NCBI RefSeq assembly: GCF_006345805.1
Contig: NC_042997.1
Span: 70,246,001-70,310,000 of the forward strand
DNA: 64,000 nucleotides
Origin: Octopus sinensis
Lineage: Eukaryota
Direction: 5' to 3'
The notes beneath the pieces are model-generated. The model had not been told where the DNA came from. It saw only the letters and a program-made list of their open reading frames with translations, and made no database searches. Of this stretch, positions 1 through 62,689 are shown one piece after another. Within the stretch, counting starts at the first letter, position 1; every line of letters starts with the position of its first letter. A program made the position numbers and the translations under genes.

Positions 1-607
1 ATATTTTTATTTTGTTGTTATTTATATTTTATGCATGAACATAAATGTTCTCGTTGAATCTGTTGATAGAGTCAAAATACTGTCTGTGTATCAGTAATAC
101 AAACGTATATTTTGCAGAATGTCTTACAGATATAAGAGTCAAGGAAGCCCGACCCAAGCCCTCCTTCCATTTACCCTAACTTCACTTCACATATCCTATA
201 TGTCTTAATATTTCCTCAATATAAGAAATTAGTGACTATCTAACCATAATAGGATATATAAATTAGTAACAAACGCATTCATGCAGTTTATGTACAAATT
301 TCAGTTACCAACAGGCTAGATCGACAGTCCAACAGACAGTAAATGACCCTGCTTTGTCACTTCTGCGGCATCGGAGTCACGTCTGAAATAGTTATTGTTT
401 GATCCAAGTGTTGTATAGCTTCGCAGTACATTTGGCTGACGACATATATTGTGAGGATTTTCGACTAAATACGAGGGTTTCTATAATTTGAATTCACATC
501 TATAATTTAATGGCTGATGAAGATGGTGATGGTATTGATGATGATGATATAATCGGCTAGCAAATCCCCATTAATTTGCTGGCCTTGTGCTTAAATTTGA
601 AACCGTT

Positions 608-641
608 ATAATAATAATAATAATAATTATTATTATTATTA

Positions 642-703: not shown

Positions 704-2097
704 TGAGACGTCGCACAGTATCCAATATTGTGATGTTGCTGATTGAAGATTTTGTGTCTATCGGGGATTTGTACTGTCTGTCAAGTCACAACAAGAACCT
801 CAGACAAACAGTTCTTCACGCAATATGCGTGCAGTTCCAAGTAATGCTGATTTTTGCAATACACCTAGATATTAGAGTATTTCTAAAGTTTCCAGATGTT
901 TCTTCAGGTTGGGTGGTATTGAACCCAATGCTCCGATGACAATAGGGACAACCTTTATGTTTGACTCTCTTAGCGCCTCAACTTGGTGATCTCGATTCTC
1001 AGGTCCCTATATTTATAATTTTTTTCTTTTTCTTTCATGTTGATATCCTGGTACTGCCACATCGATTATTAGGCACTCTTGTTTGTCCCTCCTAAAAGTT
1101 ACTATGTCTGGCCTCCGGTGCTCTAACATCTTGTCTGTCTAGAAGTCAAAGTCCAAGAAGATTTTTGCCCCCTTTCTCGTCCATTACCTTTTCTGGTGTG
1201 TGTTGGTACCAAGAACCCATTACCATGTGTCCATACTTCCGGCATAGTGGCCAGTGAAGATTTTGCGCTAGCATGTCGTATCTGCGCATGTATTCTTTCT
1301 GCGTGAGACTTTCCCAAACAGTGTAACTCACGCTTTCGACTCTCTTCCCACACATTCTGCAGAGGTTCGTAGCACTTGTGTGCTATACATCCCTTTTCAC
1401 TGAGTTGGTATTCAATGCCTGATCATGGGCAGAGATGATTAGGTTTTCAGTTTTCTTTTTTAGGTCACCCTTACTGAGCCACCTCCTTGATGCTACCTGG
1501 TCTCTTAAGTTGTTAGTTTCACGGTGGAACTAACCATGTAATTCCGTGCAGACTCTCGTTGGCTATTCGTGATCGGAATTGATTAGCACTCTCAAGGCCA
1601 TTTTTGGTAAATCCTTCTGCTTTAGCAACATAATGTAACAGGTGTTGTATGCTGTTTACCAAATATTCTGCCATGTTCCTTCTTTCAACGTTGATGCACT
1701 CTCGTACGCTAGCAGACCACGTCCAACTTTACAACTCTTCATGTAGAGACTGTTTACGTTCACCTTAGGTAGAGGGCAACATATACTGTCATCGTCTTTC
1801 GGGCAGTGTGATCGAGCTGGTTATTCTCCGTTCGTGGCCATTTCAGGATGGGTGCACTATAGTGAACTATCGCAACAGCCCATATGCTGATGGCAGTCAT
1901 AAGGTTCCTTAAGATGAGTTTTGACTTCAAGAGAAGTTTGAGGCGCTTCAAATACGCAGTGATGACCTTGTCTTTCATTACTATGTGCAAGAAAATTTTC
2001 AGCTCAAGGATCCCAAGGTACTTGTACCCATTATCATCAGTGGCTTCCATTCTCCCTCTTTTAACAATTCTATGCCCTTACAATCTGCATTTCCCCC
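703..2097 (-). mobile_element. Dong/R4-clade non-LTR retrotransposon (RLE type), 5'-truncated, decayed
   Basis: Minus-strand remnants YKYLGILE...YLKRLKLLLKSKL (RT C-terminus), MCGKRVESV...YMRRYD (CCHC region), EHRRPDIVTF...IIDVAVPG (PD..D restriction-like endonuclease), VIGALGS...LQKSALLGTARILR; (AAT)n tail; TTA repeats on both flanks. Confidence 0.9.
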
Positions 2098-2134
2098 GTT
2101 TATTATTATTGTTGTTGTTGTTATTGTTATAATT

Positions 2135-2350
2135 AAGGCGGCAGGTTGACAGAATTTTTAACACGGCGGGCAAAATGTTTAGCGGCAATTCGTCCGTCTT
2201 TACGTTCTGAGTTCAAATTCTGCCGAGGTCTACTTTGCTTTCCTCATTTCGGGGTCAGTAAAATAAGTACCAGCTGAACACTGGAGTCGATATAATCGAC
2301 TCATTCCCTCTCCCAAAATTGCTGCCCTTGTGGCAAAATTTGAAACCATT
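2135..2350 (+). mobile_element. tRNA-derived SINE family 1 (octopus OK/OR-type; family name not verified)
   Basis: A-box-like head, B-box GAGTTCAAATTC, body GGGGTCAGTAAAATAAGTACCAG, ATT tail; many similar copies in window. Confidence 0.9.
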
Positions 2351-2371
2351 ATCATTATTATTAATAATTTT

Positions 2372-2975
2372 AAAATAAAATGTCCGTTGTCTTCTACTGA
2401 ACCGGAGTCATCCTTTGACCCTAGAGTCACAGCAGGTCTTCATCTGGTGGAGAATACACGGCGTAAAATGTGTGTGGAACCTAGCAACACTATTTTCTGA
2501 AGTTCTCTCACGTTAACACTGCAAGGGAAAGTACTGTTACATCATCTCTTCCGGTCACAGTTTCAGACTTATGCTGGTACAATCGTTTTGAAGTTGGAAG
2601 CTAGTAGTGTTTACATATCTTCTAATGGATTTAATGCGCTACTCTATCGTGTCTATGAATATATTCGGTTTTTGCAAGCAATGTGCATCCAGTTAAGAAG
2701 TGGTCCACTGTCTCATCCTGTTCATGACATATTCTGCATTTCGGGTCAGTGCCATCGTTCATTATTTTGTTGTGGTAAGCCCTGGTTGCTAAGCTTTGAT
2801 CTTGTGCTGCTATGACAGAACCTTCGGTTTCAGCCTTGGGTCCTGAGCTCTTCATCCATACATGAGTGTCTCGTTTTTCTACGTCTGGTTTGTTCACTCT
2901 ACATGGGTATCGATCATGCATCGGTTTTTCTAGCCATTCTTCTTTGCTCTTCTTCTGGGCTTGTTTTTCATCTCT
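2372..2975 (-). mobile_element. Second Dong/R4-type LINE 3' fragment with internal deletion of the endonuclease
   Basis: ORF 2631-2921 KAETEGSVIAAQDQSL...CRICHEQDETVDHFLTGC...HRHDRVAH; jumps to ELQKIVLLGSTHILRRVF C-terminus; AAT tail on minus strand. Confidence 0.85.
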
Positions 2976-3419
2976 TCCTTAACAGAGAAAATTGTAGATA
3001 TGAAGTTTTAAAAATTTATTGGAAATGATCTTTTGTCTGTCCGAACAGAGAAAACTGTAGTGCTCTTGGAATAAAGAGGATGTTTACATTTTCGAATATT
3101 CAGGGTAAAAGGAATTCATAGGTATTCACAGAAGGTGTAGATATAAAGACTTTAAATTGGTTGTTTATGTGTTCGAAAGCTGTAGATATGTAAGTTCCTT
3201 ACCTAATTTGAGGGAAATTCAAAATACTCACAGGAAACTGTGGATATTCCAGTCTTTTAGAGTTATTTTTCAGTTGTCCTGTTGGGTTGTATTAGTACTT
3301 GTGTGTCTTCAGCTGCTGACTGGTCAGAACAGCGAAGTAAAAGTCCAGCCGCTGTCAAGGCGGTGAGCTGGCAGAATGGTTTTATTATTATTATTATTGT
3401 TGTTGTTGTTGTTGTTGTC

Positions 3420-3636
3420 AAGGCGGCAAGCTGGCAGAATCGTTAGCACGCTGGGCAAAATGCTTAGCGGCATTTCGTCCGTCGTTACGTTCTGAGTTCA
3501 AATTTCGCCGAGGGCGACTTTGCCTTTCTCCCCTTCGGGGTCGATAAAATAAGTACCAGTTGAACACTGGGGTCAGTGCAATAGACTTACCTCTTCTCCA
3601 CAATCTTCAGTCTTTGTGCCTATAGTAGAAAGGATT
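3420..3636 (+). mobile_element. SINE family 1 copy (aborted head also at 3357-3380)
   Basis: GGCGGCAAGCTGGCAGAATCGTTAGCACG...GAGTTCAAATTTCG...GTAGAAAGGATT. Confidence 0.92.
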
Positions 3637-4658
3637 GCGCAGACACGCGCTTAAATTACGCCATGTGCAACGATTTCTGGACGGTGAGCGTGTGTGAGGC
3701 TCGTCTTTCCGCAGATCGTCTCCTTGATGGAATTGCAGTCCTGGGTTAAGAAAAGACCGAGACTGGGCGGCTGGTACCTAGAATGTCGTCAGGCGCTCAC
3801 AATCCTCTACCAGTCGGGCAATGGAATCGGTGGTTGTTCCGCTTAAGAAATTTGAAGAGAATTATTGGCGGGACGTTCTCGAAGAGACTCTAGGCTCCGG
3901 CGAGAACGAACTGGCTAATCTGTTCCGGAGGACTTTCCAGTTGGGAACTATCATGGATAATTTCGAGATGTCCTTGGTCTGGTAGTGTTACCGGGGGGCG
4001 TTACCGGTTCGAGACAAGCTCTGCGAGCAGAATGAAAAACCGTTCTGCACGCCCTCGTTCAGTGTCCAGGCAATGCTGACTTGTGGGATTATGTTGAACA
4101 GTTGTTGTCACGTGTGGGACAGATCCGTCTGTACTGATGATTGCACCGCCGCCCTCCTTCAATTGGGCAGGCAGTGCAGTTTTCCTTTGTCTGATGGCTG
4201 TGGCAAAAGTTGTTGTGCGGTGGACAAAGCTGACAGGCAAGTGGACAGATACATTCCTCTCTGGTTGAGCTCACATTGAAAGGGAAATTGAGATTGGAGG
4301 GGGAAATGCTGTCCTCGAGTGAATTGATCGAAAGGTGGATGAGAATTACCTCTCGAAGTGCAGACCTGTGAGTCAGAGAGAAAGAATTGCAGAGGTCAAT
4401 TGCTCGTAGGGTTTCAGGGAAACCTCGTACAGTGGGGTTCCTCGATTATACCTAGAGGTGTTCCTGTATCAGTAGGGCATCACCTTTATCATCCTACGCC
4501 CCACTTCTTTTTTTTTTCATCTTTTCCAATGTATACCGTGTATACTTTCTATTTGTTTTTTATCTTTTCATTATTATATGTAAACACCCATGCTTTATGT
4601 CTGTCTCTGTATTGCACCCTACCATCCTTCGCCCTTGTTGCAAATAAATGAAATCCTT
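3637..4658 (+). mobile_element. Tx1/L1-clade LINE 3' fragment (zf-RVT region plus 3' UTR)
   Basis: Translates to W*CYRGALPVRDKL...TVLHALVQCPGNADLWDYVEQLL; homologous to 24000-24705; ends in AATAAA then (ATT)n. Confidence 0.8.
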
Positions 4659-4686
4659 ATTATTATTATTGTTATTATTATTATTA

Positions 4687-4774
<88 letters not shown>

Positions 4775-4801
4775 TATTATTATCATTATTATTATTATTA
4801 T
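4659..4801. repeat. (ATT)n/(ATC)n compound microsatellite
   Basis: Direct reading. Confidence 0.95.
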
Positions 4802-5300
4802 TGAGTGAGAGAGCAGTTCATGCCATCAAAGTGACACTGGGGTAAAATATACGAAGCCCAATATACACATCATGACTACCCGTCTGATAAAGGTACACCA
4901 GGCACATGCATCACAACCATATGTGCGCGACATGGTGATCTCATATCAAGATAAACAGCACATGACCTTGCAGGTGGGGCCCAGTTAGAATTTTCTTCAG
5001 GTTGAGTAGCCCATCCCGCTCAAACGGTCCCTGAATAACGGTTGTTTAAGGATGTTGAAAGAACCACCCATGTTTCCAGAGGTGAACTATTCAAACCCCA
5101 AAGAATCCCTCTCAACACATGGCTATGATGCTCCCCCACTACTTCTGCTCATGATCAGAGATGCACATATCGTCAGCCACTAAGGGACATGCTCAACTGG
5201 TTAAGGTCAAACAACTGACAAGCAAATCTGTGGTATTGAGCAGAATATTTGCTGTAGCCCATCTTTTATGTGGTATTGAGCAGAATATTTTCTGTAGCCC
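4802..5300 (-). mobile_element. Unclassified ~500-bp non-coding retroposon-like repeat with (AAT)n tail
   Basis: Ends ...CTCTCTCACTCAATAATAA on minus strand; second 3' fragment at 5627-5700; 5' ~33 bp duplicated (5230-5302); no ORF or Pol III boxes seen. Confidence 0.65.
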
Positions 5301-5312
5301 ATTATTATTATA

Positions 5313-5383
<71 letters not shown>

Positions 5384-5387
5384 CATC

Positions 5388-5613
5388 AAGACAGCGAGCT
5401 GGCAGAATCGTTAGCACAATCGTTAGCACGCCGGGTGAAATGCTAAGCATTTTACCCGGCGTGATCTCACGTTCTGAGATCAAATTCCACGGAGGTCGAA
5501 TTTGTTCTTCATCCTTCCGGGGTCGATAAAATTGGTACCACATGAGCACTGTGGTTGATGTAATCGATTCACCTCCTCCACCAATTTTGATGGCTTTGTG
5601 CTACAGGTTGAAA
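5388..5613 (+). mobile_element. SINE family 1 copy
   Basis: Same head and body, with small duplication of AATCGTTAGCAC; flanked by ATT repeats. Confidence 0.88.
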
Positions 5614-5626
5614 TTATTATTATTAT

Positions 5627-5700
5627 TAATGAGTGAGAGAGCACTGCATGCTATCAAAGTAACAATGGGGTACAAATATACGAAGCCCAATATATCCATT
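5627..5700 (-). mobile_element. 3' fragment of the 4802-5300 repeat
   Basis: GAGTGAGAGAGCACTGCATGCTATCAAAGTAAC matches 4803-4860. Confidence 0.8.
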
Positions 5701-11628: not shown

Positions 11629-11660
<32 letters not shown>

Positions 11661-11880
11661 AGGAAGACACCGTACTGGGAAAGTCGTTAGAACGCCGGGT
11701 AAAATGTTTAGCGCTATTTCGTCCGTCTCTACGTTCTGAGTTCAAATTCCGCTGAAGTCAATTCTGCATTTCGTCCTTTCGAGGTCGATAGAATAAGCAT
11801 AAGTTGAACACTGGGGTCGATATAATCAACTTACTCCTTCCTTGAAATTGCTGTTCTTGTGCCAAAATTTTAAACCAATA
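11661..11880 (+). mobile_element. SINE family 1 copy
   Basis: B-box GAGTTCAAATTCC and family body; preceded by (ATT)/(GTT)n. Confidence 0.85.
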
Positions 11881-12904
11881 TTAACTTCATAACTCCTGTC
11901 AGCGTTTGATCATTCTTTATGAGTACGCAGACCACACGAGATTTGTTTGACATCTCGGTTCAGTGAAAGAACCATGCTGGAATTATTCTATTTGAGTGAC
12001 TTTTTAACGATTCAGTTGTCTTATCTTGCTTGTTAATTGCACATTTAAAACTCTTTGTTCGTTTTCTGTTTGAAGATAATTTCTATCGTTTTGTCTGATG
12101 TTGTTGACTGTAATTTCATTCATTGTATTGTTTTTAATGTGTATTAAAGGGATTTGCATGTTATTTCACGTCTATGCGCACAAAACCATACAAGAAGTTT
12201 GATATTGACAACATCGAAGTTGGTATTGCTTAAGTTCTGTATCTTTTGATCACCCTGGGCAAGTAGAAATGTTATTGAAGGTATTCCCTTCTTGTGGTAA
12301 CCATCACCGTTATAGTGGTAGGTAGTATTACAGTATCAAAGGAATCTTCTCTTTACTCATGTCAGTATTACGAATTTCAGAGAGATTTATCTGCTATTTC
12401 TTGCAGGTCGGCCTATCATTAAGATGCTCCCTCGTTTTTCTTGTCTGAGTCAGTTGATTTACAGTCTGATGAATTCATATAAAAGTTTTGTTTATATATC
12501 AATTCCTTGTCAAAATACACGATAATAGATCCAGTTGTTCTAATGTTCTAATTTGAGAATTCCTTCCCTAATATCGAATAACTTATGATTGTTTAACTTT
12601 GTTATTTTCGCTGTTCTTTTCGTCGTCATAGTTGTTGTTGATACTGTCGCTCTTAAGTCTGTGATCGGTTTCAAACGAAAATATTCAAGACCAGTGGCGC
12701 TCCAGATTTGCAATCTATTCCTTTTCTCTAAGTCGAAAGTATATCATTCTCATTAATAATACAGTATATGGTAGGATTTCCTTTTTTGACCCCATAATGT
12801 TTGATTTCAACGAGATTTCGCTCTATTTCTAACAAGTCGGCCGTGAATACACTCCATGATTTCTTCGTTGCTATCACATTTATTCTAACATAGTAAGTTA
12901 TGCA

Positions 12905-20897: not shown

Positions 20898-20982
<85 letters not shown>

Positions 20983-21067
20983 TTATTATATTATTATTTT
21001 TATTATTATTTTTATTATTATTATTATTATTATTACTATTTTTATTATTATTATTATTATATTATTA

Positions 21068-21114
<47 letters not shown>

Positions 21115-21155
21115 TATTATTATTATTATTATTATTATCATTATTATTATTATTA

Positions 21156-21199
<44 letters not shown>
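20893..21199. repeat. Long interrupted (ATT)n array
   Basis: Direct reading, ~307 bp. Confidence 0.97.
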
Positions 21200-21780
21200 G
21201 AACTCTGTTCGTGGATTTCAAAGAGGAAAGACGTGTGTTCGTGAGCTGTAAGTCTTTTGTACAATTTTTCAGATAATATTGTTGTATCTGAAACTTTTAA
21301 TGACATTTCTGTGGCCAGGCCGACTGGGCTCTTGCTGAGCTGAGTCGTTAGGCGGGACGTTATCCTGTTTGGGGCGAATTTTCAATTTGAATTCTCCATT
21401 TTTATCATTTTTCAATTTTAAAATTTGCAAAACGTCCTTGGTGAAGAGTCAGGCCTTCCATTCCTTTTGACTTCCCCCTCTGCTGTCGGAAAATAACCAA
21501 AGAAGTTTTAAAGTTAATTATCTCCGCCCTCTCCGTGCCTTAAAAGGCAGAGAGAGGAACGACCAAAGTCTTGCTAGCACGTGCAAAGCTGAGCAACAGA
21601 AGGAATAAGAAGAAAAGAAACTCACGAAAGAAGAGGAAAAACACGCAAATTCAGTTAATGGACGCTGCTAGCGTCGCAACATCTGTGAATCGAAGCCCTC
21701 CCATTACCACCACTAACACGTCGAACACTCGAACAACAACTACAACCCAATGCATTAAACAGCCAGGTTTTGCTTTAATG

Positions 21781-23225
21781 GTAAAGCCTAGAAATGAATT
21801 CATTGATGTTTCTGTAGAATTTCTCAAAGACTAAAGAAACATGTTAAGAAAAAGCGAAAGATGTGTTTCGATAAACGCACCTCCAGATATTATAGACAAT
21901 ACAAACAAACGTACCATAGTGTACAAAACTATATCTTTAAAAAATAGACGCTTAGAAACTGCCACAAAGCAAGCAGTTGAAAAATGCTTGCAAGCCATTT
22001 GTAAAGACATAACATATCTGACGAGGTATAAGAAATATGGCACAATTGAAGTGAGATTTGCTGCAGAACACGGAGCTAAACAGCATTCAGCAGTCCAGCT
22101 GAGAAACTTGTTCTAGTACCAACATACTTGGGGCGGCTCGTCACCAAGATAAAAATACTGGAGATATCACCAGAAATAAATGCTGGATTGTCGCAGCCGT
22201 CCTCCTCGACTTGGAAGATAAAATCAGAACCATCCAAGTCGAGAAACAAGGTAACAACAACTGAATTGGTCAGGAATGATCCAAATAATGGTCCAAATAA
22301 GCCAAGACGTTTTGGAACAAATTCCTGAACAACTCAGCCTTCCAGCTGACAATATGCTGAACGTCACAGTTGAGGGCAGAATGCCAAGATGTTATCAATG
22401 CGGACAGAATAACCACCTGAAAGTCTTCTGCCCACAACTAGAACAGAGGGAGGGCACTACCCCTTTGATACAAGCACTACCCACACCACAAAACTGAAGC
22501 TACCTTAATTACAGAAGCAACCCCACCAAGAGAAAAAAACCAAACGAAAAGAAAGCAGAGGGGGCTCCAGCAAACGCATCACCACCAACAACAACTATAC
22601 CAGTGACAACGCCAACAACAACAGAAGCGCTGATCACAACCATCACACAGCGCCTATAAAAACGCCATCGCATCTCTTGCTAAAAAAAACATTCAGCAAA
22701 TTTCGACCCACTGGAACCATCCCTTCCCGAATCTGACCACCCAGACGTGTCGTGCGGAGAGGCCGATAGAAGTGAGTGGACAGAAATTACACGCACAACA
22801 GTATACCAACAAATAAACAAGCTGTACCCCACAAAAGCATTCAAAATCACCCGAAAACAACATCACATAAACATCCACGCTTCCAACACCTTCACCAACA
22901 CCACCACTAAAAACTCCACAGACACAGTCAATAGTACAAGGCACAACAGGGTCAAGACAGAAAGTAAACGAAAATAACAAAAACACCACAAAACTCACCG
23001 CCATAAACACAGACAACACAAACTTACTATTATACATAAAGAAAAATACAGACATCAAAATGGCAGACTTTGTTTCCCCCACGCATAATGCACTGCTACC
23101 ATACATACAGATACTTTGAACATCGCAACATACATACAGCAATACAAAATCCAAATTTCCACAGGTAGTTGGAGGCTTCAACACGGAAGTGTTCTGGAGT
23201 TTCTACAAATCTTTGATCATGGAGA
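21781..23225 (+). pseudogene. Tx1 ORF1 (gag-like), frameshifted
   Basis: ORF fragments 21841-22116 and 22276-22497 with CYQCGQNNHLKVFC (CX2CX4HX4C). Confidence 0.8.
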
Positions 23226-23269
23226 TCACTACACCCCACTTCTCCTTTTTCTTTTTACCAGTCATTCAA

Positions 23270-24004
23270 ATGCTCATATGTAAAATAGGTTGTATAAATG
23301 TACGTGGCTTGGGGTCATCTTGGAAACAAGGCCACCTATCAACGACCTCAGGTCACGAGGAATAGACGTAATAACCGTTACTGAACCCAGGCTAACCGAA
23401 CTGCGAGCTTTCTTGCGCATTTTCCATGACTACGAGATCTATTCATCTCCGTCTCGGTGGGGAATGGGTGGTGGGGGTACTGCGGTATTGTTTCGGAATG
23501 GTCTGAATATCAAAAAAGATCCGTCTTCTTGGACACAGAAGGTAAGTTGGTGGTTCTGGACGTGAATGGTAGTGACAGTGAGGCCTTCAGACTGGTGGCT
23601 GATTACGCGCCGACAGGTGCAGGACATCCAGAATATTACAGGTGTCTGGAGGTATTCCTGGGTATGTCCCCACCTTTAGTGTTAGAGGGTGATTTCAACG
23701 CCATCATAGCTGCACAAGTGGACTCTGGGGCTAGCCGATAGGAAACGGGGTTGCAAAAGCCTCGCAAACCTGCTAAGACATTTTCAGCTGTCTGACAGAT
23801 ACCGACTGGATTTCTCAAATGTGCCAATGTGGACATGGGCAAACTGTGTCGGAACATTCAGACCGTTTCTAGAGTATTTTGAAGGTCTTTAGATAGGGAG
23901 ATAGGGATAGTATTAGTTGTCCACAAGTTCAAATAGCCTGCTACACAGATCACAAATTGGTGACCTGTAAGATCGACTTAGATATCATACGTAGACAAGG
24001 CCCC
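23270..24004 (+). pseudogene. Tx1 ORF2 APE endonuclease domain, frameshifted
   Basis: MLICKIGCINVRGLG, DVITVTE, GGGGTAVLFR, FRLVADYAP, GDFNAI, TDHKLV motifs. Confidence 0.85.
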
Positions 24005-24705
24005 TCTATAGGCACGGAAGCGCCGTCAGTCGTACCTGTCTGAGATGTATGCAGAGTGATGAAATTGTTCTGCACACTCTCATCCAGTGCTCGAGCATAT
24101 CTGATATATGGGTTTATGTCAAAAACCTGCTGTCACGTGAAGGACGAGTCCGCTTGTCGGCTGATTACATCATGAAGATTACCCCGCCGCCTTCATTTGG
24201 CCGGTAAGGGAAGGCAATTTTCATCTGTCTCGTGGCTGTAAATATGTTGTGTGGTGGTCTAGACTGAAAGGGTTGAAGACAAATAATTTTCTCTTTGGCC
24301 TACCCGTCATCAACTTTTTCAGATACCATCTGAAAAAGAAAGTGAGGGTTGGGAGAGAAGTGCTGACTTCCAGCAATTTTGTTTAAAGGTGGGTGAATGT
24401 GGCGAAGATGATCCGTGTCAATAGGCCTACTTTGACATGTGCTTTTGAGTTTCCAAAGCTGAGAGAGAGAGAGAGAGAGAGAAAGTTGAGTAGAGGGCTC
24501 TTGCCCTAGTGGTCGTGGCGCTTGTGGAATTTTCGTAGGGTCTCCATGAGTAGCCCAGTGTTACTTGTTTCTTTTGGGCACTTTCTTTGTTATATTTTTC
24601 ATTGTTATTGACTTTTTACCCGACGCTTTATGTAACCCCACTTTGTCGTTCATATTTTGTAATGTCAAATCTTATTTTTGTCGGTCCATGTGGCTAATAA
24701 AGAGG

Positions 24706-24742
<37 letters not shown>

Positions 24743-24989
24743 GTATTCAATTTTCTCTGCATGAGCATTTATTATATTTATTTGTAATATGGCAGAAACA
24801 ACAACGAACACTGTGAAAGTGACCGTGCTTCATCAGTAAGCTGCCAATTATAAACATTCGTTCTATTGTAAATATATATATATAATAATATATATATATA
24901 TATATATTTCTATATATATATATATTATATATATACCACATACATACATTTATTGTGAGATACACACATATACACATACATATTTTTCA

Positions 24990-34256: not shown

Positions 34257-36243
34257 ATAACAATGAACTTGTTAAAAAGGTGGTGGAAGAGAAAACATCA
34301 GCGTCATGTTATTACTACCATGAAAATCTAAACAAGAAAGAGAGAAGGCAGTAACGAAGAAATAATACAAATAAAATTATAAGAATGACAACAGGAATCT
34401 AATCAGTCTATATGTTTGGGGTAACGTTTATAGTCCACTGTATTGATCTAGTAAGTTGACTTGTATTAGTATTGTATGAAGCACATTACTGTTTAGTAAA
34501 CTGGATGATGATGAAATCCAAAAAAAAAAAAAATGCAATTGTTACGGAATGAACGACTTTAATCAGGAACAATGGAAATTCACAGTTGCATTCTTATTTT
34601 GACGCAATTATTTAAAGTATTTCATAACTTTGATTCACTAGATTAAGAATAGCAACTAACTCTTCGATTTTCTTCTATAATTAAGGTTGTTAGGAGCGTA
34701 CACTTTAATACAATTCACAGCTTAAAGACTAATGTTTGAGGCCCTTTCTATAACCACAAAATCCCAGGTGTACGTCGTAAACGTGTCATTAAATACAATA
34801 TATAGAGTACAGATTAAATAACTAGCAGCTAACAAAACGATGTGAAATCTTCATCTAGTATGGATTAGACGCGAGTAGTTATATAGAAGTATTCACAGAG
34901 ACAGATTGAAACATTCAAATTGTTTTAGTAGAGAACTTATAAAATTTACTCTATGCACTTTTCTGTATATTTTCTCTCTTCTTCGCGAAACTTTCCTTAG
35001 TTGTAATTTCCTTTTCTTAATCTGAAGTACATGACTCTCTTCATTTTTGCTGCCTTCTACCACTTTCTAATTTTCGGAAAATGATCTTCCTCATCTATCT
35101 CCTTCCGATCTTCCGGCTTTCTCGAGAAGTGTGCTCCTAAGTGTGTTTGATAACCAGCTGCACGTCGAGTTTCTTCTTTTAGCATCGTCAGTGATACTGC
35201 TTTTGCTTTTGCACTCACCATGAGATGTACATCGTCAAGAGCATTGTAGTCTTGAGTGATACAGAAGTGCAAATCAATGCTAACATAGCGACCAGTTATG
35301 ATCCGGAACACTTACGTTACGAACATCCACCATACTGCATTACAATGGTGACAGCGTTTTTGAGGCCCATGTCCCTGCTAATAACACTAACTTTCACATT
35401 TGTGTTGCGCTGCGCCCACGTACTTGTTCTGCGGGATAACTTTGTGTGTTGTTGAGTAATTCACTACTGTGCATATCACTTGACCTCAGCCTCGATTCTG
35501 AAAAGTGTGCTGAAAATACCGTATACCATGCCAGCTGGATAGGTACGACAGAGTCACACACGCTGGGTAGGGAGGCAATAATTCAGTTTTAAAAGTTTTA
35601 TTACATACTCCATCACACACACACACACCACACAAATGCACGCTGTTTTTGTGAGGCAAAGGCATTTCAACTTTCATCTTGCCCTCTAAAACAAATTTCT
35701 TGAGGAAGAATACTGAGTACCACGTGACACATAACTACGATACTTGATTCTCTGACAGGACTTGTCTATAGCTAAAACTTCTTGTGGGCTGCGGCCTTAA
35801 CAAATTTATGTTGTTAATAATGTTCAACAAAATGCTTTCATTCCGCTCAAAATCAGGAGTCATTAATTTTTCTTTCAAAATGGACTTCCTAGAATTTTAT
35901 AATATTTTTGTCCTCCCTATTCTTCATGTTTTTGTGATTTCTTATTCAGCTGGCAACCCGTTTGTTTGAGGGAGCGTTTCTTCATGACAACTAACAAGAT
36001 ATTCACAAATATTTATTTCTATTAATCTGAGATCAAAAAATATAATCATAAGCCTGCTCACTGTTGTTTTTTTTATAATCCCTCACCCTAACTTACTCAG
36101 AAAATTAGAACATTTTTAAAGAAAAAATAACAAGAATGAATCCGCCACCCGCCAAAAAAGAAAAAAGAAACAGAAGTGTTGTAAAGCATATCCGGTCGCG
36201 GTAAAATACAATACAGCTACTAAGACTACCACTTATAATTATA

Positions 36244-36430
36244 AGGGCAGCCATTATAGGGGAGTTGATTACATCGATTCTAGTGTTCAACTGGTACTGA
36301 TTTTATCGACCTCAAAAGGATGAAAGGCAAAGTCGACCTCCGCGGAATTTGAACTCAGAATGTTGCGACAGAAGAAATACTGCTACGCATTCGACCCGGC
36401 GTGCTAACGATTCTGCTAGATTGCCGCCTT
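36244..36430 (-). mobile_element. SINE family 1 copy
   Basis: Reverse complement of head and body. Confidence 0.85.
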
Positions 36431-38243
36431 ACTTCCACTTGTAATAATAAAATTAATTATAACAACATTAATTCTTTTCATAATATATATAAAACCTGAA
36501 ATTTGCGGTGAGCAGGGCTAGTGCTCAACAGGTCCTTATTTCATCGATGCGAAAAGTGGAAGGCAGAGTCGGCCACAACAGCATTTGAACTGTAAATGTA
36601 AAAATGCCGCTAAACTTATTGTCCGTCACGCTAAAAGTCCTGCAAAGTATTCTTTACGGAGGCTGTAGCGATTCTACTGATGATGATGATTTTGATGAAA
36701 AAGATGTAGCAAAGCAGTTACGGGACAATAAAGAGATCAGACATGTGAAATGGACGGCAACATTAATACAAGACGGAGAAAAATGGAAGTTAAAGACGGC
36801 AATTATAACAGATAAGTGAGAGTTAAGTAGATAATTAAATAAATAAATGCATACATAAAACATTTCATAAAGAAGTAAAGAGAGGGATAACTACGAAAGA
36901 GAGTGCAAAATCATTATTGCACACGTACACACATATGTATAAATACGTACGCATAATGCACACACACACACACACGTACACGCACACACATATATGCACA
37001 CACACGCACACACTCATGTTTGCGTGCATATGCATGAGCTTATGATAGTTTAGATGTGTATGTGCGTGCGCACATAAATCTCATCAAAATGCATTAAGGA
37101 AACAATTACAATAATAAGTAAATAAATCAATCAAATACTGTACTGTAAGTCGTTAAAGCTACAATACCAGAACATGTAAGAGAAAACGGACATATATTTC
37201 CAAGTTTCATTTTCACCTCATCCCCCACCTCTCTCTCCCTCCCTTTTTCAATCTTTGTATACTTTGCTAATATATTGATATATCTAAAACAAACATAACA
37301 GAGATTGTATTGTATGAAAAAGTGGTTGAGGTAGGTATGAGAGGAAGAATCGATTACAACTGTAAAATGCAACACAGAAAGGCTATAGAATACACTATTA
37401 CACACGAACAATAAAGGGAAGCAGTCATATGCAGTCGTTACTACAGCTACTGCTGCTACTGAAACGAAGCTTCAGTTGCTGGTCTATTCATTTTAAAGTT
37501 TAGTGCTCTGGGGTGTGGTTGAAGTGATTTCGTTTCATGCTTTGCTGGTGTTGGTCTTGTGAACTTATTGATGATAATAATTGAGGATTGCTCGATTTTT
37601 CAGCGATTGATATTTCCAGTGTAGCTGGTGTGATTTAGTTTCTGGTCTTGCTGGTGAGGTATTGTTGACAATAACACTGAACGGTCTGTTATGCAGTCAT
37701 TTGTCATTGGTGTTGTAGCTGTTATTATTGTTGTTTTTAGCATAATATAAATTTTGTTCTTTAGCCTTCATATAAGCTCTATCCGAGTATTATAATTAAC
37801 AAGGGCGTTCCAGCCGTGGCCTCCTGCTTTTTTTTGTATATCTTTGTTTCAAGATAGAAAAATGTGAGTCAGAGAAATTTGGCTGATAGTTTTAATAGAT
37901 CTAACACGGTCATAAGATCTCTTTCATCGTCTCTGCTTGTTGGAGATCATAGCACAATGTAATTGCTCATAGCTTAAATTCTGAGGCTGCTTTTTAGACA
38001 AACTTCAGCACTGATACATCACAGACTAGTGTGTGATATGACTAAATGACCAATTGATCACGTAAAAGATTTCTCCTAATCTGGTGGTCTAGTCTGTCTC
38101 ATGTTTGATGTTCAGCTGTTTAAGTGGCGTGATCATCTACAATTGTTTGTAGTATTTGCGATCATAGTGCTTTTGCCGTTGTTGTAATTGTTGTTTAGAA
38201 TTAGATCATCTCTGATCGAGCAGACGTATGATGAGATACTTAC

Positions 38244-39249: not shown

Positions 39250-39564
39250 TCAATCTGGCAGAATCGTTAGCACGCCGGACGAAATGCTTAGCGGCATTTC
39301 GTCCGACTTTGCCTTTTATCCTTTCGAGGTCGATAATTTTTGTACCAGTGAAATAGTGGGATCGATAAAATCGACTAGTATCTTCCCGCCAAATTTCAGG
39401 CGTTGTGCCTTTAGTAGAAAGGATTATTTATTATTATTATTATTATTATTATTGTTGTTGTTGTTGTTGTTGTTGTTAAGGTGGTGAGCTGGCAGAGTCG
39501 TTAGCGTGGTGGACGAAATACTTAGCATATGTACATATATATACATCCGCATATATATATATAT

Positions 39565-39631
<67 letters not shown>

Positions 39632-40612
39632 CGTTCTGAGTTCAAATTCCGCCGAGGTTGACGTTACCTTTCATCCTTTCAGAGTCAATAAATTTCAGGC
39701 CTTGTGCCTATAGTAGCAAGGATTATTATTATTACTATTTTTAAGGTGGTGTGCTGGCAGAATCATTAGCACGCTGGACGAAATGCTTAGCGGTGTTTCG
39801 CCCGTTACTACGTTCTGAGATTAAATTCCGCCAAGGACGACTTTGCCTTTCATCCTTTAAGGGTCGATAAAATAAGTACCAGTTGAACACTGGGGTTGTT
39901 GTAATCCATTTCATCCCCTTCCCCAAAGTTGCTCTCCTGGTGGCCAAATTTGAAACCATTATTATCATTATTAAGGCGGCGATCTGACAGAATCTTTTGC
40001 ACGCTGGACGAAATGCTTAGCAGTAATTCGCTCGTCAGTACGTTCTCAGTTCATATTTTGCCGAGGTCGAGTTCGCCATTCATCCTTTGAGCTCGATAAA
40101 TTAAGTACCAGTGAAACACTTGGGTCGATGTAATCGACTAGTCCCCGCCCTCCAAATTTCAGGCCTTGTGCCGTAGTAGAAATGATTATTTGAAATCATT
40201 CTTGTTGTTGTTGTTGTTGTTGTTGTTATTATTATTATTATTATTATTATTGTTATGCAGACGTTGCCTTTTATCCTTTCAAGGTCGATAAATTAATTGC
40301 TAGATTCGTAATGGGGTCGATCTAAACGATTGGATCCCTCCTCCAAAATTTCAGGCCTTGTGCCTTTAGTAGAAGTGATTATTATTATTACTGTTATCGC
40401 GGTGAGATAGCAGAATCGTTAGCACAGCGGACAAAATGCTTAGTGCCATTTCGTCCGTCTTCACGTTCTAATTTCAAATTCCGCCGGGATCGACTTTGCC
40501 TTTCAATCTGTCGGGGTTCGTAACATACATTCCAGTTAAGTACTGGGATCGATGTAATCGACTAGTACCCGTACTATAAATTTTAGACTTTGTGCCTATA
40601 ATAGGAAGGATT
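39250..40612 (+). mobile_element. Head-to-tail array of six SINE family 1 copies
   Basis: Copies at ~39250-39425, 39478-39724, 39743-39960, 39973-40187, 40259-40380 and 40398-40612, separated by (ATT)/(GTT)n. Confidence 0.92.
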
Positions 40613-41291
40613 ATTATTATCACTATCATCATCGTCTTCGGATTTGTTGTTAATGTTAATCCCCACGTGAATCCCGATTTAGCAGAGCCACGAATCAAAC
40701 ATGATTCGATCATTTTCATCGTGTCTTTGTTTAACATGTCTAACGTGTCATTGTCTAACATGTCGCTGATATTATCTTCCCTAGCGTGAAGATGTGATCT
40801 GAGGAAATTTCGTATCTATTACTAACATGACGCGAGATCTCAAAGTAGCTCTCATGTTGCTTTGGTAATTGTTTTTCGTGAAACATTGATCTGATAAGAG
40901 GTGGGGCTATATCAGTTTTATGTCTGGTATAATTGAAGATTTGAAGTGTGTTGTTACTTTTTCTGATGTCATTCGGTTAAAACCTTAGGTCATCCCTGGC
41001 TGGTCAGCCCTATAATTAAAGATGTTGACCACTCATAACCATCCCGTCTGGAGGCATATCATAAATCTACATTTTCTAGTCTGCAGGGTGTAATTTGAGG
41101 GTGTCTCTCTGGGTGCTACATCGGTGACTACATGCACAGGCTTGTGATTTCTTTTCTGTATTACGTAGAGATGAGATTGATTTCAGTATATATATATATG
41201 TATATATATATAAATACATGCACATACATACATGTATACATATATATGTATATATATATATATATATATACATACATGCATATACATGTGT

Positions 41292-45060: not shown

Positions 45061-45773
45061 ATTATAATTAGGGTTCAGCTAATTGCTTCACCACGTACCG
45101 AATTTAGAAATAGGATTTAAAATTCCATTTCTGCTACTATAAGAATCTCCATGACTGTAAACATACTTTTTTTACCATTTTTACGAAGGCAAAGAGGAAA
45201 ACAATGAATCAACACGACCAGGATTAATTATATACGCGTTTCGAGATTAAGTTTTACTTACTTCTCTCTCTTCGGTATAATATTTCCAATTTATAAAATT
45301 TGAAAGTGCTAGGGCTGAATATGCACACAATCGAGCGTCATCATGTAACAGATATCCAACAACACTTCCAAAATTTACAGACCCGAATGTGAATACGCTA
45401 TTCAGACTCTATACCTTTGCCTTCAAACTCTATACTTTTTGCATTCGTAAAAACGTGTTTACAGTCAAGGAGATTCTTATAGTAGCAGAAAAGGACTTTT
45501 AACTCCTATTTCTAAATTCGGTATGTGATGAAGCAATTAGCTGACCCCTAATTATAATTATGTGGATAATTTTACCTATAAAGGCTATTTTAACATACCG
45601 ATCTACTTGGTAAAATTATTAATTAATTTAATTAATAAATTTTAGCCTTCTATTATTAATTTAAAATTATAATTTACTCCATGATAGAATACTGCAGTTT
45701 TCTGCGGTATTGCACATAGCATACGCGTGGGTATAGAGTTTAAATAGTGCATTCACATTCGGCTCTGTAAATT
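45061..45773. repeat. Two interleaved inverted-repeat pairs
   Basis: A 45061-45163 / A' 45456-45558; B 45372-45415 / B' 45730-45773. Confidence 0.75.
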
Positions 45774-46767
45774 ACATTGATCCCAGTGTTCAGCTGGTAC
45801 TTATTCTATCGATCCCGAAAGGATCTAAAGTAACACCTTTGTCCGGCATGCTAACGCAGCCTTCATGAGAGATAAAAGAATATTGCAAAAGAGATTTTTC
45901 GTAAACTTAAATATATAGAAATATCTGATGACACGTGACCTAATATAATGAGTTTAATGACTGCTGTTGTTTAAATCCACGTTAACTATGATCAAGTAGA
46001 TATGCTGAAAATCATTCCAACCATAACCCTAGCATCGTTTTAGGAGGGAGTTGGGGCTTTTTACTGAATTATCTATTGTGTCCTTCCGTAGTAAAATTGT
46101 ACATTTTGATAGAGATATGGCAACTATCTCTAGCTGGTCAATCACCCACACTGAAGCTCCGTCATTGCCTCAGATATCATCTATTGTAGTCTTACCATTT
46201 ATGATTTCTTCCTGGGCATTAGCATAACAAGTATAATAGTTTCTAACAGAATCGAAGTTGTTGGAGAGAAAGGTTCATAGTGTAAATCACGACTGATTCA
46301 TGAATAAAAATATAGTTACTCATCTATTGTAATCTCTTATTATAAAAGGCAGATTTTATCTGCCTCCCTTTCGGAGTTATAGAAATCTACAATATAGGAT
46401 TTCTTCAATTACAATTTACCTAGCATTTTTAAGAGTACAATGCATCGCGTCATGCCAGGTCCAGTTTTTAAAATTTAAACTCCAATTAAGCAAAATTTAT
46501 AGAAAACTCACATTCTGGTGTGTGTGTCAAATGCTTTTCTTAGTCTGGTTTACACCACACGCAAACGCACACACACAGTGGGCAACGAATAAAATGAAAG
46601 TAAATAGCGACAGAGTGATTTGAGGAAGACTAAAGTGAAAGTATTCTGTCTATGACGCTGATAGATACATGAGTAAAATGTATGGGAAGCTAAGAGCTAA
46701 GAGTGAGTGAAAATGTTCTTGGAAGAGAGTAATTAGTAATAAAGTAAACATACACTCATACATACAT

Positions 46768-54275: not shown

Positions 54276-54561
54276 TATATACTTAATCGTAAATTAGTAT
54301 GATCGTTAAAATGTGATATATTAATTTGCAAGGATGTAAGACCATTTTACGTTTAAGCAGCTTAAGAATCAGTGGCAAAGGTGTTGTTGCTATATCCCAT
54401 AACATAGCAGTTTCACACAACGATTCGATAAGCACAAATACCAAACTAGAATATAACAACGATTTGAACTTCGTTTGTGTGCATGAATGTCTAAGGATGT
54501 GGGTTCGTAATTATTATATAACCGTTTATTGTAATGTAAATATAATTTTCAATATGTTATA

Positions 54562-54778
54562 ATGGTTTCATGTGTTGGCACAAGTCCAGTAGGTTTGGGG
54601 GAGGAGCTAAGTCGATTAAATCGATCTCAGTGTTCAACTGGTACTTATTTTATCAACCCGAAAGGTTGAAAGGCAAAGTCGACCCCGGCAGAATTTGAAC
54701 TCAGAACATAAAGACAGATGAAATATCGCTAAGCATTATGCCCGGTGTGCAAAGGATTCTGCTAGCTCGTCGCCTTAA
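54562..54778 (-). mobile_element. SINE family 1 copy
   Basis: Reverse complement of full family consensus. Confidence 0.88.
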
Positions 54779-62012: not shown

Positions 62013-62470
62013 TATATATATATGAATGTATATATATATTATGAGCCACTAATAATTTTATACGTTGGAGATATTGCCTATAGAACATCTTAGGCAACGT
62101 TGTTCTACACGCAGAACCCAATTAGAACAAATCACTCTAATCGACTTGAGACTGGTCTGTATATATATATATATACACACACAAAATATAGGTACAAGCC
62201 ACTAATACTTTCATACATTGGAGATCATGTCTAGGCAGGTTTTGATAATACACTTAGTATTTCCCAGCAATCTGCAATGCTCAAAGCACATGGCCTCTAC
62301 AAGTATATGCAACATCTCCAATGTATGAAACTATTTGTAGTTCATAAATATACATTGCAAACATTAAATAGTACTCACAGGATGGAGTACGTACGTGTAA
62401 ATGTATGTATGGATAAATGCGTATGTATATATACATATGAAGAGACTGATAGATGAATAAATATATATAT

Positions 62471-62542
<72 letters not shown>

Positions 62543-62689
62543 ATATATATATGTATGTATGTCTATATGCGTGTGTACTATATGTGTATGTGTGTGTAAG
62601 AGTGTGTTTGCCTGTGTGCATGTTAGTTTCACATGTTTGAGATGTTTCAGTATCCTTATCTACATATATGCATGCATACCAGTATTCCA

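What the first reader, a model, noticed from the sequence alone, without database searches (positions are those of the whole stretch)
2324..4660. SINE family 1 shares its 3' terminus with the Tx1 LINE: candidate Tx1-driven SINE
Seen: SINE end GCCCTTGTGGCAAAATTTGAAACCATTAT (2324-2352) versus Tx1 end GCCCTTGTTGCAAATAAATGAAATCCTTAT (4631-4660). The other SINE end type TGTGCCTATAGTAGAAAGG-ATT resembles the second Tx1 end TGTGGCTAATAAAGAGG-ATT (~24688-24708). Polarity in (ATT)n is the same. Established: SINEs borrow LINE 3' tails for recognition by the LINE RT. Inference: this abundant SINE is mobilised by an ATT-targeting Tx1 family, an uncommon partnership.
Basis: partly seen in the sequence, partly recalled or inferred. 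Interest (0 to 1): 0.7.

Follow-up and report, generated by a model that had tools for sequence, protein, structure and literature searches.

The report
Octopod SINE borrowing a Tx1-like LINE tail
A short, abundant mobile element in this octopus-like DNA ends in the same small hairpin and ATT repeats as a Tx1-type LINE and sits in the same ATT microsatellites, so that LINE is very probably what copies it; this is a standard kind of parasite-on-parasite pairing with an unusual partner.

Summary
The 64-kb window holds about 16 copies or fragments of a ~215-bp SINE with two tail types (A and B). It also holds two decayed copies of one LINE lineage, which has an APE endonuclease, an RT and a CCHC domain. 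All of them end in (ATT)n with the same polarity.

Inside the window alone the SINE/LINE tail similarity is only marginal (z about 2). It does not vanish at consensus level, and it strengthens against intact relatives fetched from outside (z 5-6).

The decisive result comes from Argonauta hians. There, SINEs sharing this SINE's core end in a tail 93-97% identical over 30-35 nt to the 3' UTR end of the orthologous LINE. A profile built only from those outside tails finds both LINE ends and four SINE tails among its top seven hits in the window.

The shared module is a 4-bp hairpin with a CTTGT loop about 12 nt before the repeats. SINEs and LINEs are both embedded in ATT tracts.

The RT is nearer to Xenopus Tx1 (37% identity) than to human L1 (25.5%).

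Mobilisation itself is inferred, not shown. I rate it a new member of a known kind, of moderate interest.

The parts
2135..2352 (+). Full-length SINE copy, tail type A (…GCCCTTGTGGCAAAATTTGAAACC|ATTAT). It is preceded by (ATT)3(GTT)4 and followed by a short ATT tract.
3420..3637 (+). Full-length SINE copy, tail type B (…TTTGTGCCTATAGTAGAAAGG|ATT). It is preceded by a 25-nt SINE head fragment (3357-3381) and by (ATT)n(GTT)n. Its ATT tail is interrupted after one unit by LINE1.
3638..4660 (+). LINE1: a 5'-truncated, frameshifted copy of the L1/Tx1-like LINE, comprising the C-terminal CCHC region and the 3' UTR. It ends …GCCCTTGTTGCAAATAAATGAAATCC|TTATT and is inserted in the ATT tail of the SINE at 3420-3637.
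4657..4802 (+). (ATT)n tail/target tract following LINE1, with GTT and ATC variants.
20898..21199 (+). (ATT)101 tract immediately upstream of the 5' end of LINE2.
21200..24708 (+). LINE2: a copy of the same LINE lineage with its 5' end present. It has an ORF1 remnant with a CCHC knuckle and an APE endonuclease remnant. A deletion of about 2.2 kb removes the RT (junction near 24004). The zf-RVT/CCHC region and the 3' UTR remain, ending …CCATGTGGCTAATAAAGAGG|ATT.
24706..24747 (+). (ATT)14 tail of LINE2.
541..609 (+). 5'-truncated SINE fragment (last ~65 nt, tail type A), followed by (TAA)n/(ATT)n at 610-703.
5388..5617 (+). SINE copy (A-like tail TTTGTGCTACAGGTTGAAA|TTATT), preceded by (ATT)27 at 5301-5383.
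11662..11881 (+). SINE copy, tail type A, preceded by (ATT)4(GTT)10.
39251..40614 (+). Head-to-tail array of six SINE copies: 39251-39427 (B), 39478-39726 (B, split by (AT)n), 39743-39962 (A), 39973-40189 (B), 40260-40382 (B, 5'-truncated) and 40396-40614 (B). Each lies in the ATT/GTT tail of the copy before it.
54559..54776 (-). Full-length SINE copy on the minus strand, tail type A.
36243..36430 (-). SINE copy on the minus strand with a decayed tail. A further fragment lies at 36520-36642 (-) and another at 45771-45823 (-).

Best explanation
The window carries an old, abundant ~215-bp SINE. It has an A-/B-box-like head, a central core shared with Argonauta SINEs, and a ~35-nt tail. That tail was taken from the 3' UTR end of an L1/Tx1-type LINE lineage of octopods.

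The shared 3' module is a 4-bp hairpin with a (C/T)TTGT loop, an A-rich spacer of about 12 nt, and (AUU)n.

Proposed mechanism (inferred):
1. The LINE's ORF2 protein (APE endonuclease, RT, CCHC domain) recognises this module on its own RNA and, in trans, on SINE RNA.
2. It nicks (ATT)n/(AAT)n microsatellites.
3. The terminal (AUU)n repeats anneal to the nicked strand and prime reverse transcription.

The result is insertion in one polarity inside ATT tracts. Each insertion leaves a new ATT tract that serves as the next target, which produces tandem SINE arrays and LINE-in-SINE-tail nesting.

What is shown: tail homology, shared repeat and polarity, shared microsatellite context, and the LINE's domain content and its nearness to Tx1.

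What is inferred: protein-RNA recognition of the hairpin, endonuclease specificity for ATT, Pol III transcription of the SINE, and trans-mobilisation itself.
For: Tail homology
- SINE B consensus against the intact LINE ends L001/L005/L003b gives z 4.4-6.3 and p 1e-4 to 6e-4.
- In Argonauta locus L003, the last 30-35 nt of the LINE 3' UTR match eight or more SINE tails at 90-97% identity, with E down to 3e-10. Those SINEs share the window SINE's core at 72-79% identity.
- An HMM built from outside tails only recovers LINE2 (E 1.2e-4), LINE1 (0.056) and four SINE tails among the top seven window hits.
- The 8-mer CTTGTGSC occurs six times in the window, always in SINE tails. It is also present in the ends of L001, L005, L006 and Argonauta LINE_b.

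Hairpin
- In an alignment of 24 tails, 86.5% of cells are paired, against 71% in shuffles (0 of 500 reach it) and 22-49% when the partners are slid. Two pairs show compensatory changes.
- All six minimum-free-energy folds contain the hairpin.

Target
- LINE2 is flanked by (ATT)101 and (ATT)14.
- LINE1 lies in a SINE's ATT tail.
- L005 ends in a long (ATT)n.
- At least 9 of 13 SINE 5' junctions abut ATT/GTT repeats, although such tracts cover about 1% of the window.

LINE identity
- Precomputed Pfam domains are PF03372 + PF00078 + PF13966.
- The best PDB match is human L1 ORF2p at 1.5e-41, against R2 at 1e-22.
- The RT region is 36.8% identical (257 bits) to Xenopus Tx1, against 25.5% (169 bits) to human L1.

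Precedent
- The Tx1 clade includes microsatellite-specific families, and Tx1-Mar is proposed to mobilise SINEU (PMC4494074).
Against: - Within the window, the SINE tails against the two LINE ends are only marginally above chance. Unanchored scans do not separate them from AT-rich background.
- The shared region is short, and half of it is A-rich.
- The hairpin has only 4 bp. The fold z-scores are weak (-0.2 to -2.3). I derived the structure from the same related sequences that I then counted it on.
- ARAGORN and Rfam find no tRNA in the SINE heads, so the Pol III head rests on motifs read by eye.
- Only two LINE copies and about 16 SINE copies were available, all of them old. The SINE copies are 68-87% identical to their consensus. 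The in-window LINEs are 66-76% identical to L001/L005.
- The Argonauta SINEs have a different head, and their tails lack (ATT)n, so tail capture could have happened more than once.
- The 3' ends of the other LINE clades reported in octopus genomes (RTE, CR1, Dong-R4) could not be surveyed.
- No activity or transcription data are available.
Confidence: 0.75

Rival explanations
1. Chance resemblance. The two element types merely share an AT-rich end and an ATT microsatellite, and the SINE's real partner is another LINE clade such as RTE, CR1/L2 or Dong-R4.
For: The in-window similarity is weak (z 0.7-2.9). SINE tails score no better than AT-rich background against the LINE-end consensus. RTE, CR1 and Dong-R4 are abundant in octopus genomes (PMC13282606). 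A minus-strand LINE fragment with a CCHC domain ends in the same microsatellite at 2353-2375.
Against: The Argonauta SINE and LINE tails are 93-97% identical. The profile built from outside tails picks out the window's SINE tails. Stem positions in the tails show compensatory changes. The minus-strand LINE uses the opposite repeat polarity, (TAA)n in its own sense, whereas every SINE copy has (ATT)n in sense, as LINE1 and LINE2 do.
Confidence: 0.07
2. The tail is LINE-derived, but only as a historical relic. The SINE captured the tail in an octopod ancestor and was later, or mainly, mobilised by a different enzyme that recognises only the (AUU)n repeats (relaxed recognition) or the ATT target.
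For: The window SINE tail has diverged substantially from present-day intact LINE tails, with about 70-75% identity and two indels. Several unrelated elements sit in ATT tracts: the 497-bp element at 4804-5300 and the minus-strand LINE. Relaxed, repeat-only recognition is known for L1-clade LINEs (PMC3747384).
Against: The hairpin stem is kept through compensatory changes and a symmetrical loss of one base pair, and the loop CTTGT is kept. This argues for continued selection on the module. Two tail characters split SINE types A and B in parallel with the LINE subtypes.
Confidence: 0.13
3. The direction is reversed. The LINE copies acquired a SINE-derived 3' end, for example by template switching or by SINE insertion into the LINE tail, so the shared tail says little about recognition.
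For: LINE1 physically abuts a SINE. Nested insertions in ATT tails are common here.
Against: The motif lies at the end of a ~250-nt 3' UTR that is conserved across L001, L005, L006 and the Argonauta copies. No SINE core or head sequence lies upstream of it. Intact-ORF LINE copies from three sources carry it. Whichever way the tail moved, a shared tail on replicating copies implies shared recognition.
Confidence: 0.05

Closest known systems
SINE/LINE pairs with a common 3' tail ('stringent' recognition), such as eel UnaSINE1/UnaL2, MIR/L2 and tobacco TS/RTE (reviewed in PMC3747384)
   Same: A short non-coding element whose last tens of nucleotides match the 3' UTR end of a LINE. A small stem-loop lies just upstream of short terminal repeats. 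The terminal repeats are shared by both partners.
   Different: The partner here is an L1/Tx1-type LINE. In the 58-pair survey, L1-clade tail pairs are listed only from plants and a green alga, and no pair comes from a cephalopod. Here both partners are also confined to one microsatellite.
Crocodilian SINEU mobilised by Tx1-Mar LINEs (Kojima 2015, PMC4494074)
   Same: A non-autonomous retroposon is assigned to a Tx1-clade driver because both share an insertion target.
   Different: SINEU has snRNA-derived heads and poly(A) ends. The link is by target preference and shared 5' parts, not by a shared 3' tail. The target there is a Mariner transposon, not a microsatellite.
Microsatellite-specific Tx1-clade LINEs: Kibi (TC)n, Koshi (TTC)n, and crocodilian Tx1 families in (TTCC)n/(TTTC)n (Kojima & Fujiwara 2004, as cited in PMC4494074)
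   Same: An L1/Tx1-type LINE flanked on both sides by one microsatellite.
   Different: The repeat here is (ATT)n. I found no ATT-specific Tx1 family in the papers I could read. Related copies (L006 and the Argonauta copies) end in other sequences, so the terminal repeat has changed within the lineage.
Octopus SINEs OK, OR1 and OR2 (Ohshima & Okada 1994), and the 'tRNA-Core/tRNA-Deu' SINEs of octopus genome annotations (PMC8967140)
   Same: The host group, the size and the abundance all fit. From memory, the central region resembles the CORE domain.
   Different: I could not compare sequences because the 1994 paper is not held. No LINE partner for these SINEs is named in any paper I could search.

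Membership tests
SINE with a LINE-derived tail | The last tens of nucleotides are homologous to the 3' end of a LINE in the same genome or lineage | tested here: met
   window species; Argonauta: 93-97% over 30-35 nt
SINE with a LINE-derived tail | The same terminal repeat unit, in the same polarity, as the LINE | tested here: met
   (ATT)n lies in sense after every SINE copy that has a preserved end, and after LINE1, LINE2 and L005
SINE (general) | Internal Pol III promoter / small-RNA-derived head | tested here: inconclusive
   An A-box-like motif (TGGCAGAATCG) and a B-box-like motif (GAGTTCAAATTCC) were read by eye in the consensus. ARAGORN found no tRNA. Rfam found none at gathering score, or at E<=1 in the SINE array.
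SINE (general) | Short, non-coding, many dispersed copies with variable 5' truncation | tested here: met
   About 16 copies or fragments of up to 220 bp on both strands; truncated copies at 541, 39251 and 40260
SINE (general) | Target-site duplications | not testable with these tools
   The insertions lie inside microsatellites, so duplications cannot be recognised
CORE-SINE superfamily | The conserved ~60-bp CORE domain | not tested
   This is a resemblance recalled from memory only. Octopus SINEs are called tRNA-Core/tRNA-Deu in PMC8967140. No reference CORE sequence was available.
L1/Tx1-type LINE | N-terminal APE endonuclease + RT + C-terminal CCHC (zf-RVT) in ORF2 | tested here: met
   L001: PF03372, PF00078, PF13966. 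Window copies: weak Exo_endo_phos and zf-RVT hits. Best PDB match is human L1 ORF2p.
Tx1 clade | The RT groups with Tx1 rather than with L1 proper | tested here: inconclusive
   36.8% identity / 257 bits to Xenopus Tx1 (P0332), against 25.5% / 169 bits to human L1 ORF2p over the same ~450 aa. This points to Tx1, but it is a two-reference comparison, not a phylogeny or RTclass1 run. Mollusc L1-like LINEs are annotated as L1-Tx1 in the literature.
Tx1 clade | Target-sequence preference | tested here: met
   LINE2 lies between (ATT)101 and (ATT)14. LINE1 lies inside a SINE's ATT tail. Only two 5' junctions were available.

The most novel reading that the evidence does not exclude
The great SINE expansion of octopus genomes (reported as 4-12% of the genome) was driven not by the RTE or CR1 LINEs usually discussed, but by an ATT-microsatellite-specific Tx1-clade LINE. 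This would be an animal L1-superclade element with 'stringent' 3'-end recognition, acting through a conserved 4-bp hairpin with a CUUGU loop plus (AUU)n. The partnership would predate the Octopus/Argonauta split, with the terminal repeat and target changing along the way. It would itself seed and spread ATT tracts, creating a self-renewing safe harbour.
Probability: 0.45. Interest if true: 0.6.

Novelty: new member of a known kind. Interest (0 to 1): 0.45.

Why it matters
SINEs are among the largest components of octopus genomes and have been linked to their reorganisation. In the papers I could search, no LINE driver is named for them.

Naming the driver would do four things:
- It would make SINE age bursts interpretable against the activity of one LINE lineage.
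- It would explain why these SINEs form arrays in ATT tracts.
- It would add an animal example of tail-specific recognition in the L1/Tx1 group, where mammalian L1 recognises only poly(A).
- It would offer a compact, testable RNA module (hairpin plus repeats) for retrotransposition assays.

It is not a new principle. SINE/LINE tail sharing and target-specific Tx1 elements are both established.

Tried and rejected
- Unanchored local-alignment scans of the window with the SINE tails or with the LINE-end consensus. AT-rich background reaches the same scores as the cross-matches, so these scans cannot decide.
- ARAGORN, and Rfam at both thresholds, on the SINE heads. No tRNA was found. The Rfam E-value hits in the array are AT-repeat artefacts.
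- A metagenome scan with a 19-nt SINE core word.
- Cluster look-up of ten distant ORF2 relatives to obtain names. No informative names came back.
- The supplement of Kojima 2015, sought for Tx1 reference sequences. It is not held.
- Pfam on the minus-strand LINE pieces and on the Penelope-like stretch gave only one zf-RVT hit. A PDB search of the minus-strand LINE gave nothing.
- Specific pairing of tail A with LINE1 and tail B with LINE2. The alignment scores do not discriminate. Only the base after the stem and the last two bases before ATT agree, so I keep this as a weak lead.
- A Dong-R4-type (TAA)n-specific LINE as the driver. I rejected it on repeat polarity, but its tails could not be examined.
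Full report
**What is at the coordinates.** The window is AT-rich eukaryotic DNA (36.7% G+C, no N), full of microsatellites.

Self-comparison finds about 16 copies or fragments of one ~215-bp repeat on both strands. A multiple alignment shows its parts:
- a head with A-box-like and B-box-like motifs;
- a well-conserved centre (…GGGGTCGATAAAATAAGTACCAGTTGAACACTGGGGTCGATGTAATCGACT…);
- two tail types.

Type A ends …GGCCTTGTGCCAAAATTTGAAACC|ATTATT and has six copies. Type B ends …AGGCCTTGTGCCTATAGTAGAAAGG|ATTATT and also has six copies. Copies are 68-87% identical to the local consensus, so they are old. ARAGORN and Rfam find no tRNA in the heads, so the Pol III head is read by eye only.

**The two 'Tx1 ends' are real LINE 3' ends.**
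- Window 21200-24708 (LINE2) has an ORF1 remnant with a CCHC knuckle, an APE endonuclease remnant, a C-terminal CCHC/zf-RVT region and a 3' UTR. All are frameshifted.
- Window 3638-4660 (LINE1) is a 5'-truncated copy of a related family.
- A protein search with the LINE2 remnants led to contig L001. It carries an endonuclease ORF and a 715-aa RT + zf-RVT ORF.
- The closest relatives of that ORF include an Argonauta hians protein at 70% identity, and contigs L004-L006.
- LINE2 aligns to L001 on either side of a ~2.2-kb deletion that removed the RT.

**Is the LINE Tx1?**
- The domain set is Exo_endo_phos + RVT_1 + zf-RVT.
- The best solved structure is human L1 ORF2p (1.5e-41), well ahead of R2 (1e-22).
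- A third protein search brought in the Xenopus laevis 'Transposon TX1 149 kDa protein' (P0332).
- Over the same ~450-aa RT region, L001 is 36.8% identical (257 bits) to that protein and 25.5% identical (169 bits) to human L1 ORF2p.
- Papers annotate the L1-like LINEs of octopus and other molluscs as L1-Tx1.

This points to Tx1. It remains a two-reference comparison, not a phylogeny.

**Tail similarity within the window.** SINE consensus tails against the two in-window LINE ends score only z 0.7-2.9. Scanning the window with either tail does not lift the cross-matches above AT-rich background.

**Tail similarity with outside data.** The ends of intact-ORF LINE copies are:
- L001: …TTTAGGCCCTTGTGGCCAATAAAGAAACG|ATTATTA
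- L005: …CCGGGCCCTTGTGGCCAATAAAAGAAATC|(ATT)n

Against these, SINE B reaches z 5.2-6.3 and p about 1e-4 against genomic 40-mers. So the similarity does not vanish at consensus level. It improves when decayed LINE copies are replaced by intact ones.

**The decisive comparison.** The 22-kb Argonauta locus L003 holds the orthologous LINE, a second 3'-UTR-only LINE fragment, and at least eight SINE copies whose core matches the window SINE at 72-79%.
- Those SINEs end …TTCTGTGTTCGGCCCTTGTGGCTAATAGAGAAATCTAT.
- The LINE fragment ends …TTCTGTGTCGGCCCTTGTGGCTAATAAAGAAATCTAT.
- That is one indel and one substitution in 38 positions. By blastn the identity is 90-97% over 25-35 nt, with E down to 3e-10.

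A profile HMM built only from these Argonauta tails plus L001 and L005 was searched on both strands of the window. Its best hits were LINE2 (E 1.2e-4), LINE1 (0.056), then SINE tails at 2324, 39694, 40149 and 40350. Only one unrelated site fell among the top seven. SINE tails occupy about 0.3% of the searched sequence, so this enrichment is not chance.

**The shared module.** All tails carry a 4-bp stem around a 5-nt loop:
- LINE: GGCC-CTTGT-GGCC
- SINE A: TGGC-CTTGT-GCCA
- SINE B: AGGC-CTTGT-GCCT

The two apparent indels between the SINE and LINE tails amount to the symmetrical loss of one base pair.

On 24 tails, 86.5% of cells pair, against 71% in shuffles (0 of 500 shuffles reach it) and 22-49% with slid partners. 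Two pairs change on both sides. Every one of six minimum-free-energy folds contains the hairpin, though fold z-scores are weak.

The helix is tiny. The sequences are related, and I derived the structure from them. I therefore treat it as a good lead rather than a proven structure. Small stem-loops just upstream of the terminal repeats are the known recognition feature of 'stringent' LINE tails (PMC3747384).

**Target.**
- LINE2 is bounded by (ATT)101 and (ATT)14.
- LINE1 begins one ATT unit into the tail of the SINE at 3420-3637 and ends in a 146-bp ATT tract.
- At least 9 of 13 SINE 5' junctions abut ATT/GTT repeats, which cover roughly 1% of the window.
- Six SINEs form a head-to-tail array at 39251-40614, each lying in the tail of the one before.

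Both partners thus share a target and a polarity. This is the same argument used for SINEU and Tx1-Mar.

**Rivals.**
- Chance, or a different partner, is largely excluded by the Argonauta identity and the outside-profile test.
- A minus-strand LINE fragment with a CCHC domain ends in the same microsatellite at 2353-2375, but with (TAA)n in its own sense. That is the opposite polarity to every SINE copy.
- Two possibilities cannot be excluded here: that the tail is a relic and present mobilisation relies on the repeats alone, and that tail capture happened more than once. The Argonauta SINEs have another head, and their tails lack ATT.

**Literature.**
- No paper in the held library names a LINE partner for octopus SINEs.
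- A survey of 58 tail-sharing pairs has no Tx1 pair and no cephalopod pair.
- Tx1-clade microsatellite specialists and a Tx1-driven SINE class are known.
- Repbase and Dfam entries could not be consulted, so the pairing may already be recorded there.

**Verdict.** I class it as a new member of a known kind: a SINE/LINE tail pair whose LINE is a target-specific Tx1-type element. Interest is moderate. My confidence is about 0.85 that the tail is homologous to this LINE lineage's end, about 0.8 that the LINE is of the Tx1 clade, and about 0.7 that it is or was the SINE's driver.

Noticed in passing
window 2353-2990 (-) and 1149-2077 (-): Two fragments of another LINE family on the minus strand, carrying a C-terminal CCHC motif (a zf-RVT hit at E 6e-6 for 2634-2978). 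The fragment at 2353-2990 ends, in its own sense, in (TAA)n-like repeats that merge with the ATT tail of the SINE at 2135-2352. The same microsatellite is therefore used in the opposite polarity by a second LINE family. Its clade was not determined.
   Followed up: partly
window 4804-5300 (+); partial copy 5632-5694 (+): A 497-bp non-coding element that starts GAGTGAGAGAGCA and ends …TTCTGTAGCCC. It is flanked by (ATT)n on both sides, and its end is unrelated to the SINE/LINE tail. This may be a third family living in ATT tracts. Only these two copies occur in the window.
   Followed up: partly
window 2110-2134, 3395-3419, 11630-11660, 39453-39477, 40205-40230: Runs of (GTT)n lie between the upstream (ATT)n and the 5' end of many SINE copies, in the order (ATT)n(GTT)n-SINE. 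LINE2 has no such run at its 5' junction. The origin is unexplained. Possibilities are a compound target, 5'-junction synthesis, or mutation of the tract.
   Followed up: no
window 3357-3381: A 25-nt SINE head fragment (AAGGCGGTGAGCTGGCAGAATGG) is followed by (ATT)n(GTT)n and then a complete SINE. It looks like an aborted or template-switched copy.
   Followed up: no
window 39478-39726: A SINE copy whose head is split by an (AT)40 expansion (39551-39629) and whose core is partly deleted. Rfam's low-score miRNA and other hits here are artefacts of the AT repeat.
   Followed up: yes
window about 60672-63806 (-): Reading-frame remnants that by eye look like a Penelope-like element: an RT with YIDD (61015-61713) and a GIY-YIG-like stretch …NVIYCISCSFC…GQTGR… (60672-61076). 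Pfam gave no hit at E<=0.01, so this is unverified.
   Followed up: partly
L006 (3' end); L003 12262-12300 and 12620-12665: Related LINE copies keep the hairpin motif but end in different sequences: CA-rich in L006, and …GAAATCTAT with no microsatellite in Argonauta. The terminal repeat, and probably the target, has changed within this LINE lineage.
   Followed up: partly
protein P0007: A 466-aa protein labelled as coming from a Herbaspirillum sp. metagenome-assembled genome is 69% identical to the octopod LINE ORF2 C-terminal half. This is most likely host (cephalopod) contamination in a bacterial bin.
   Followed up: no
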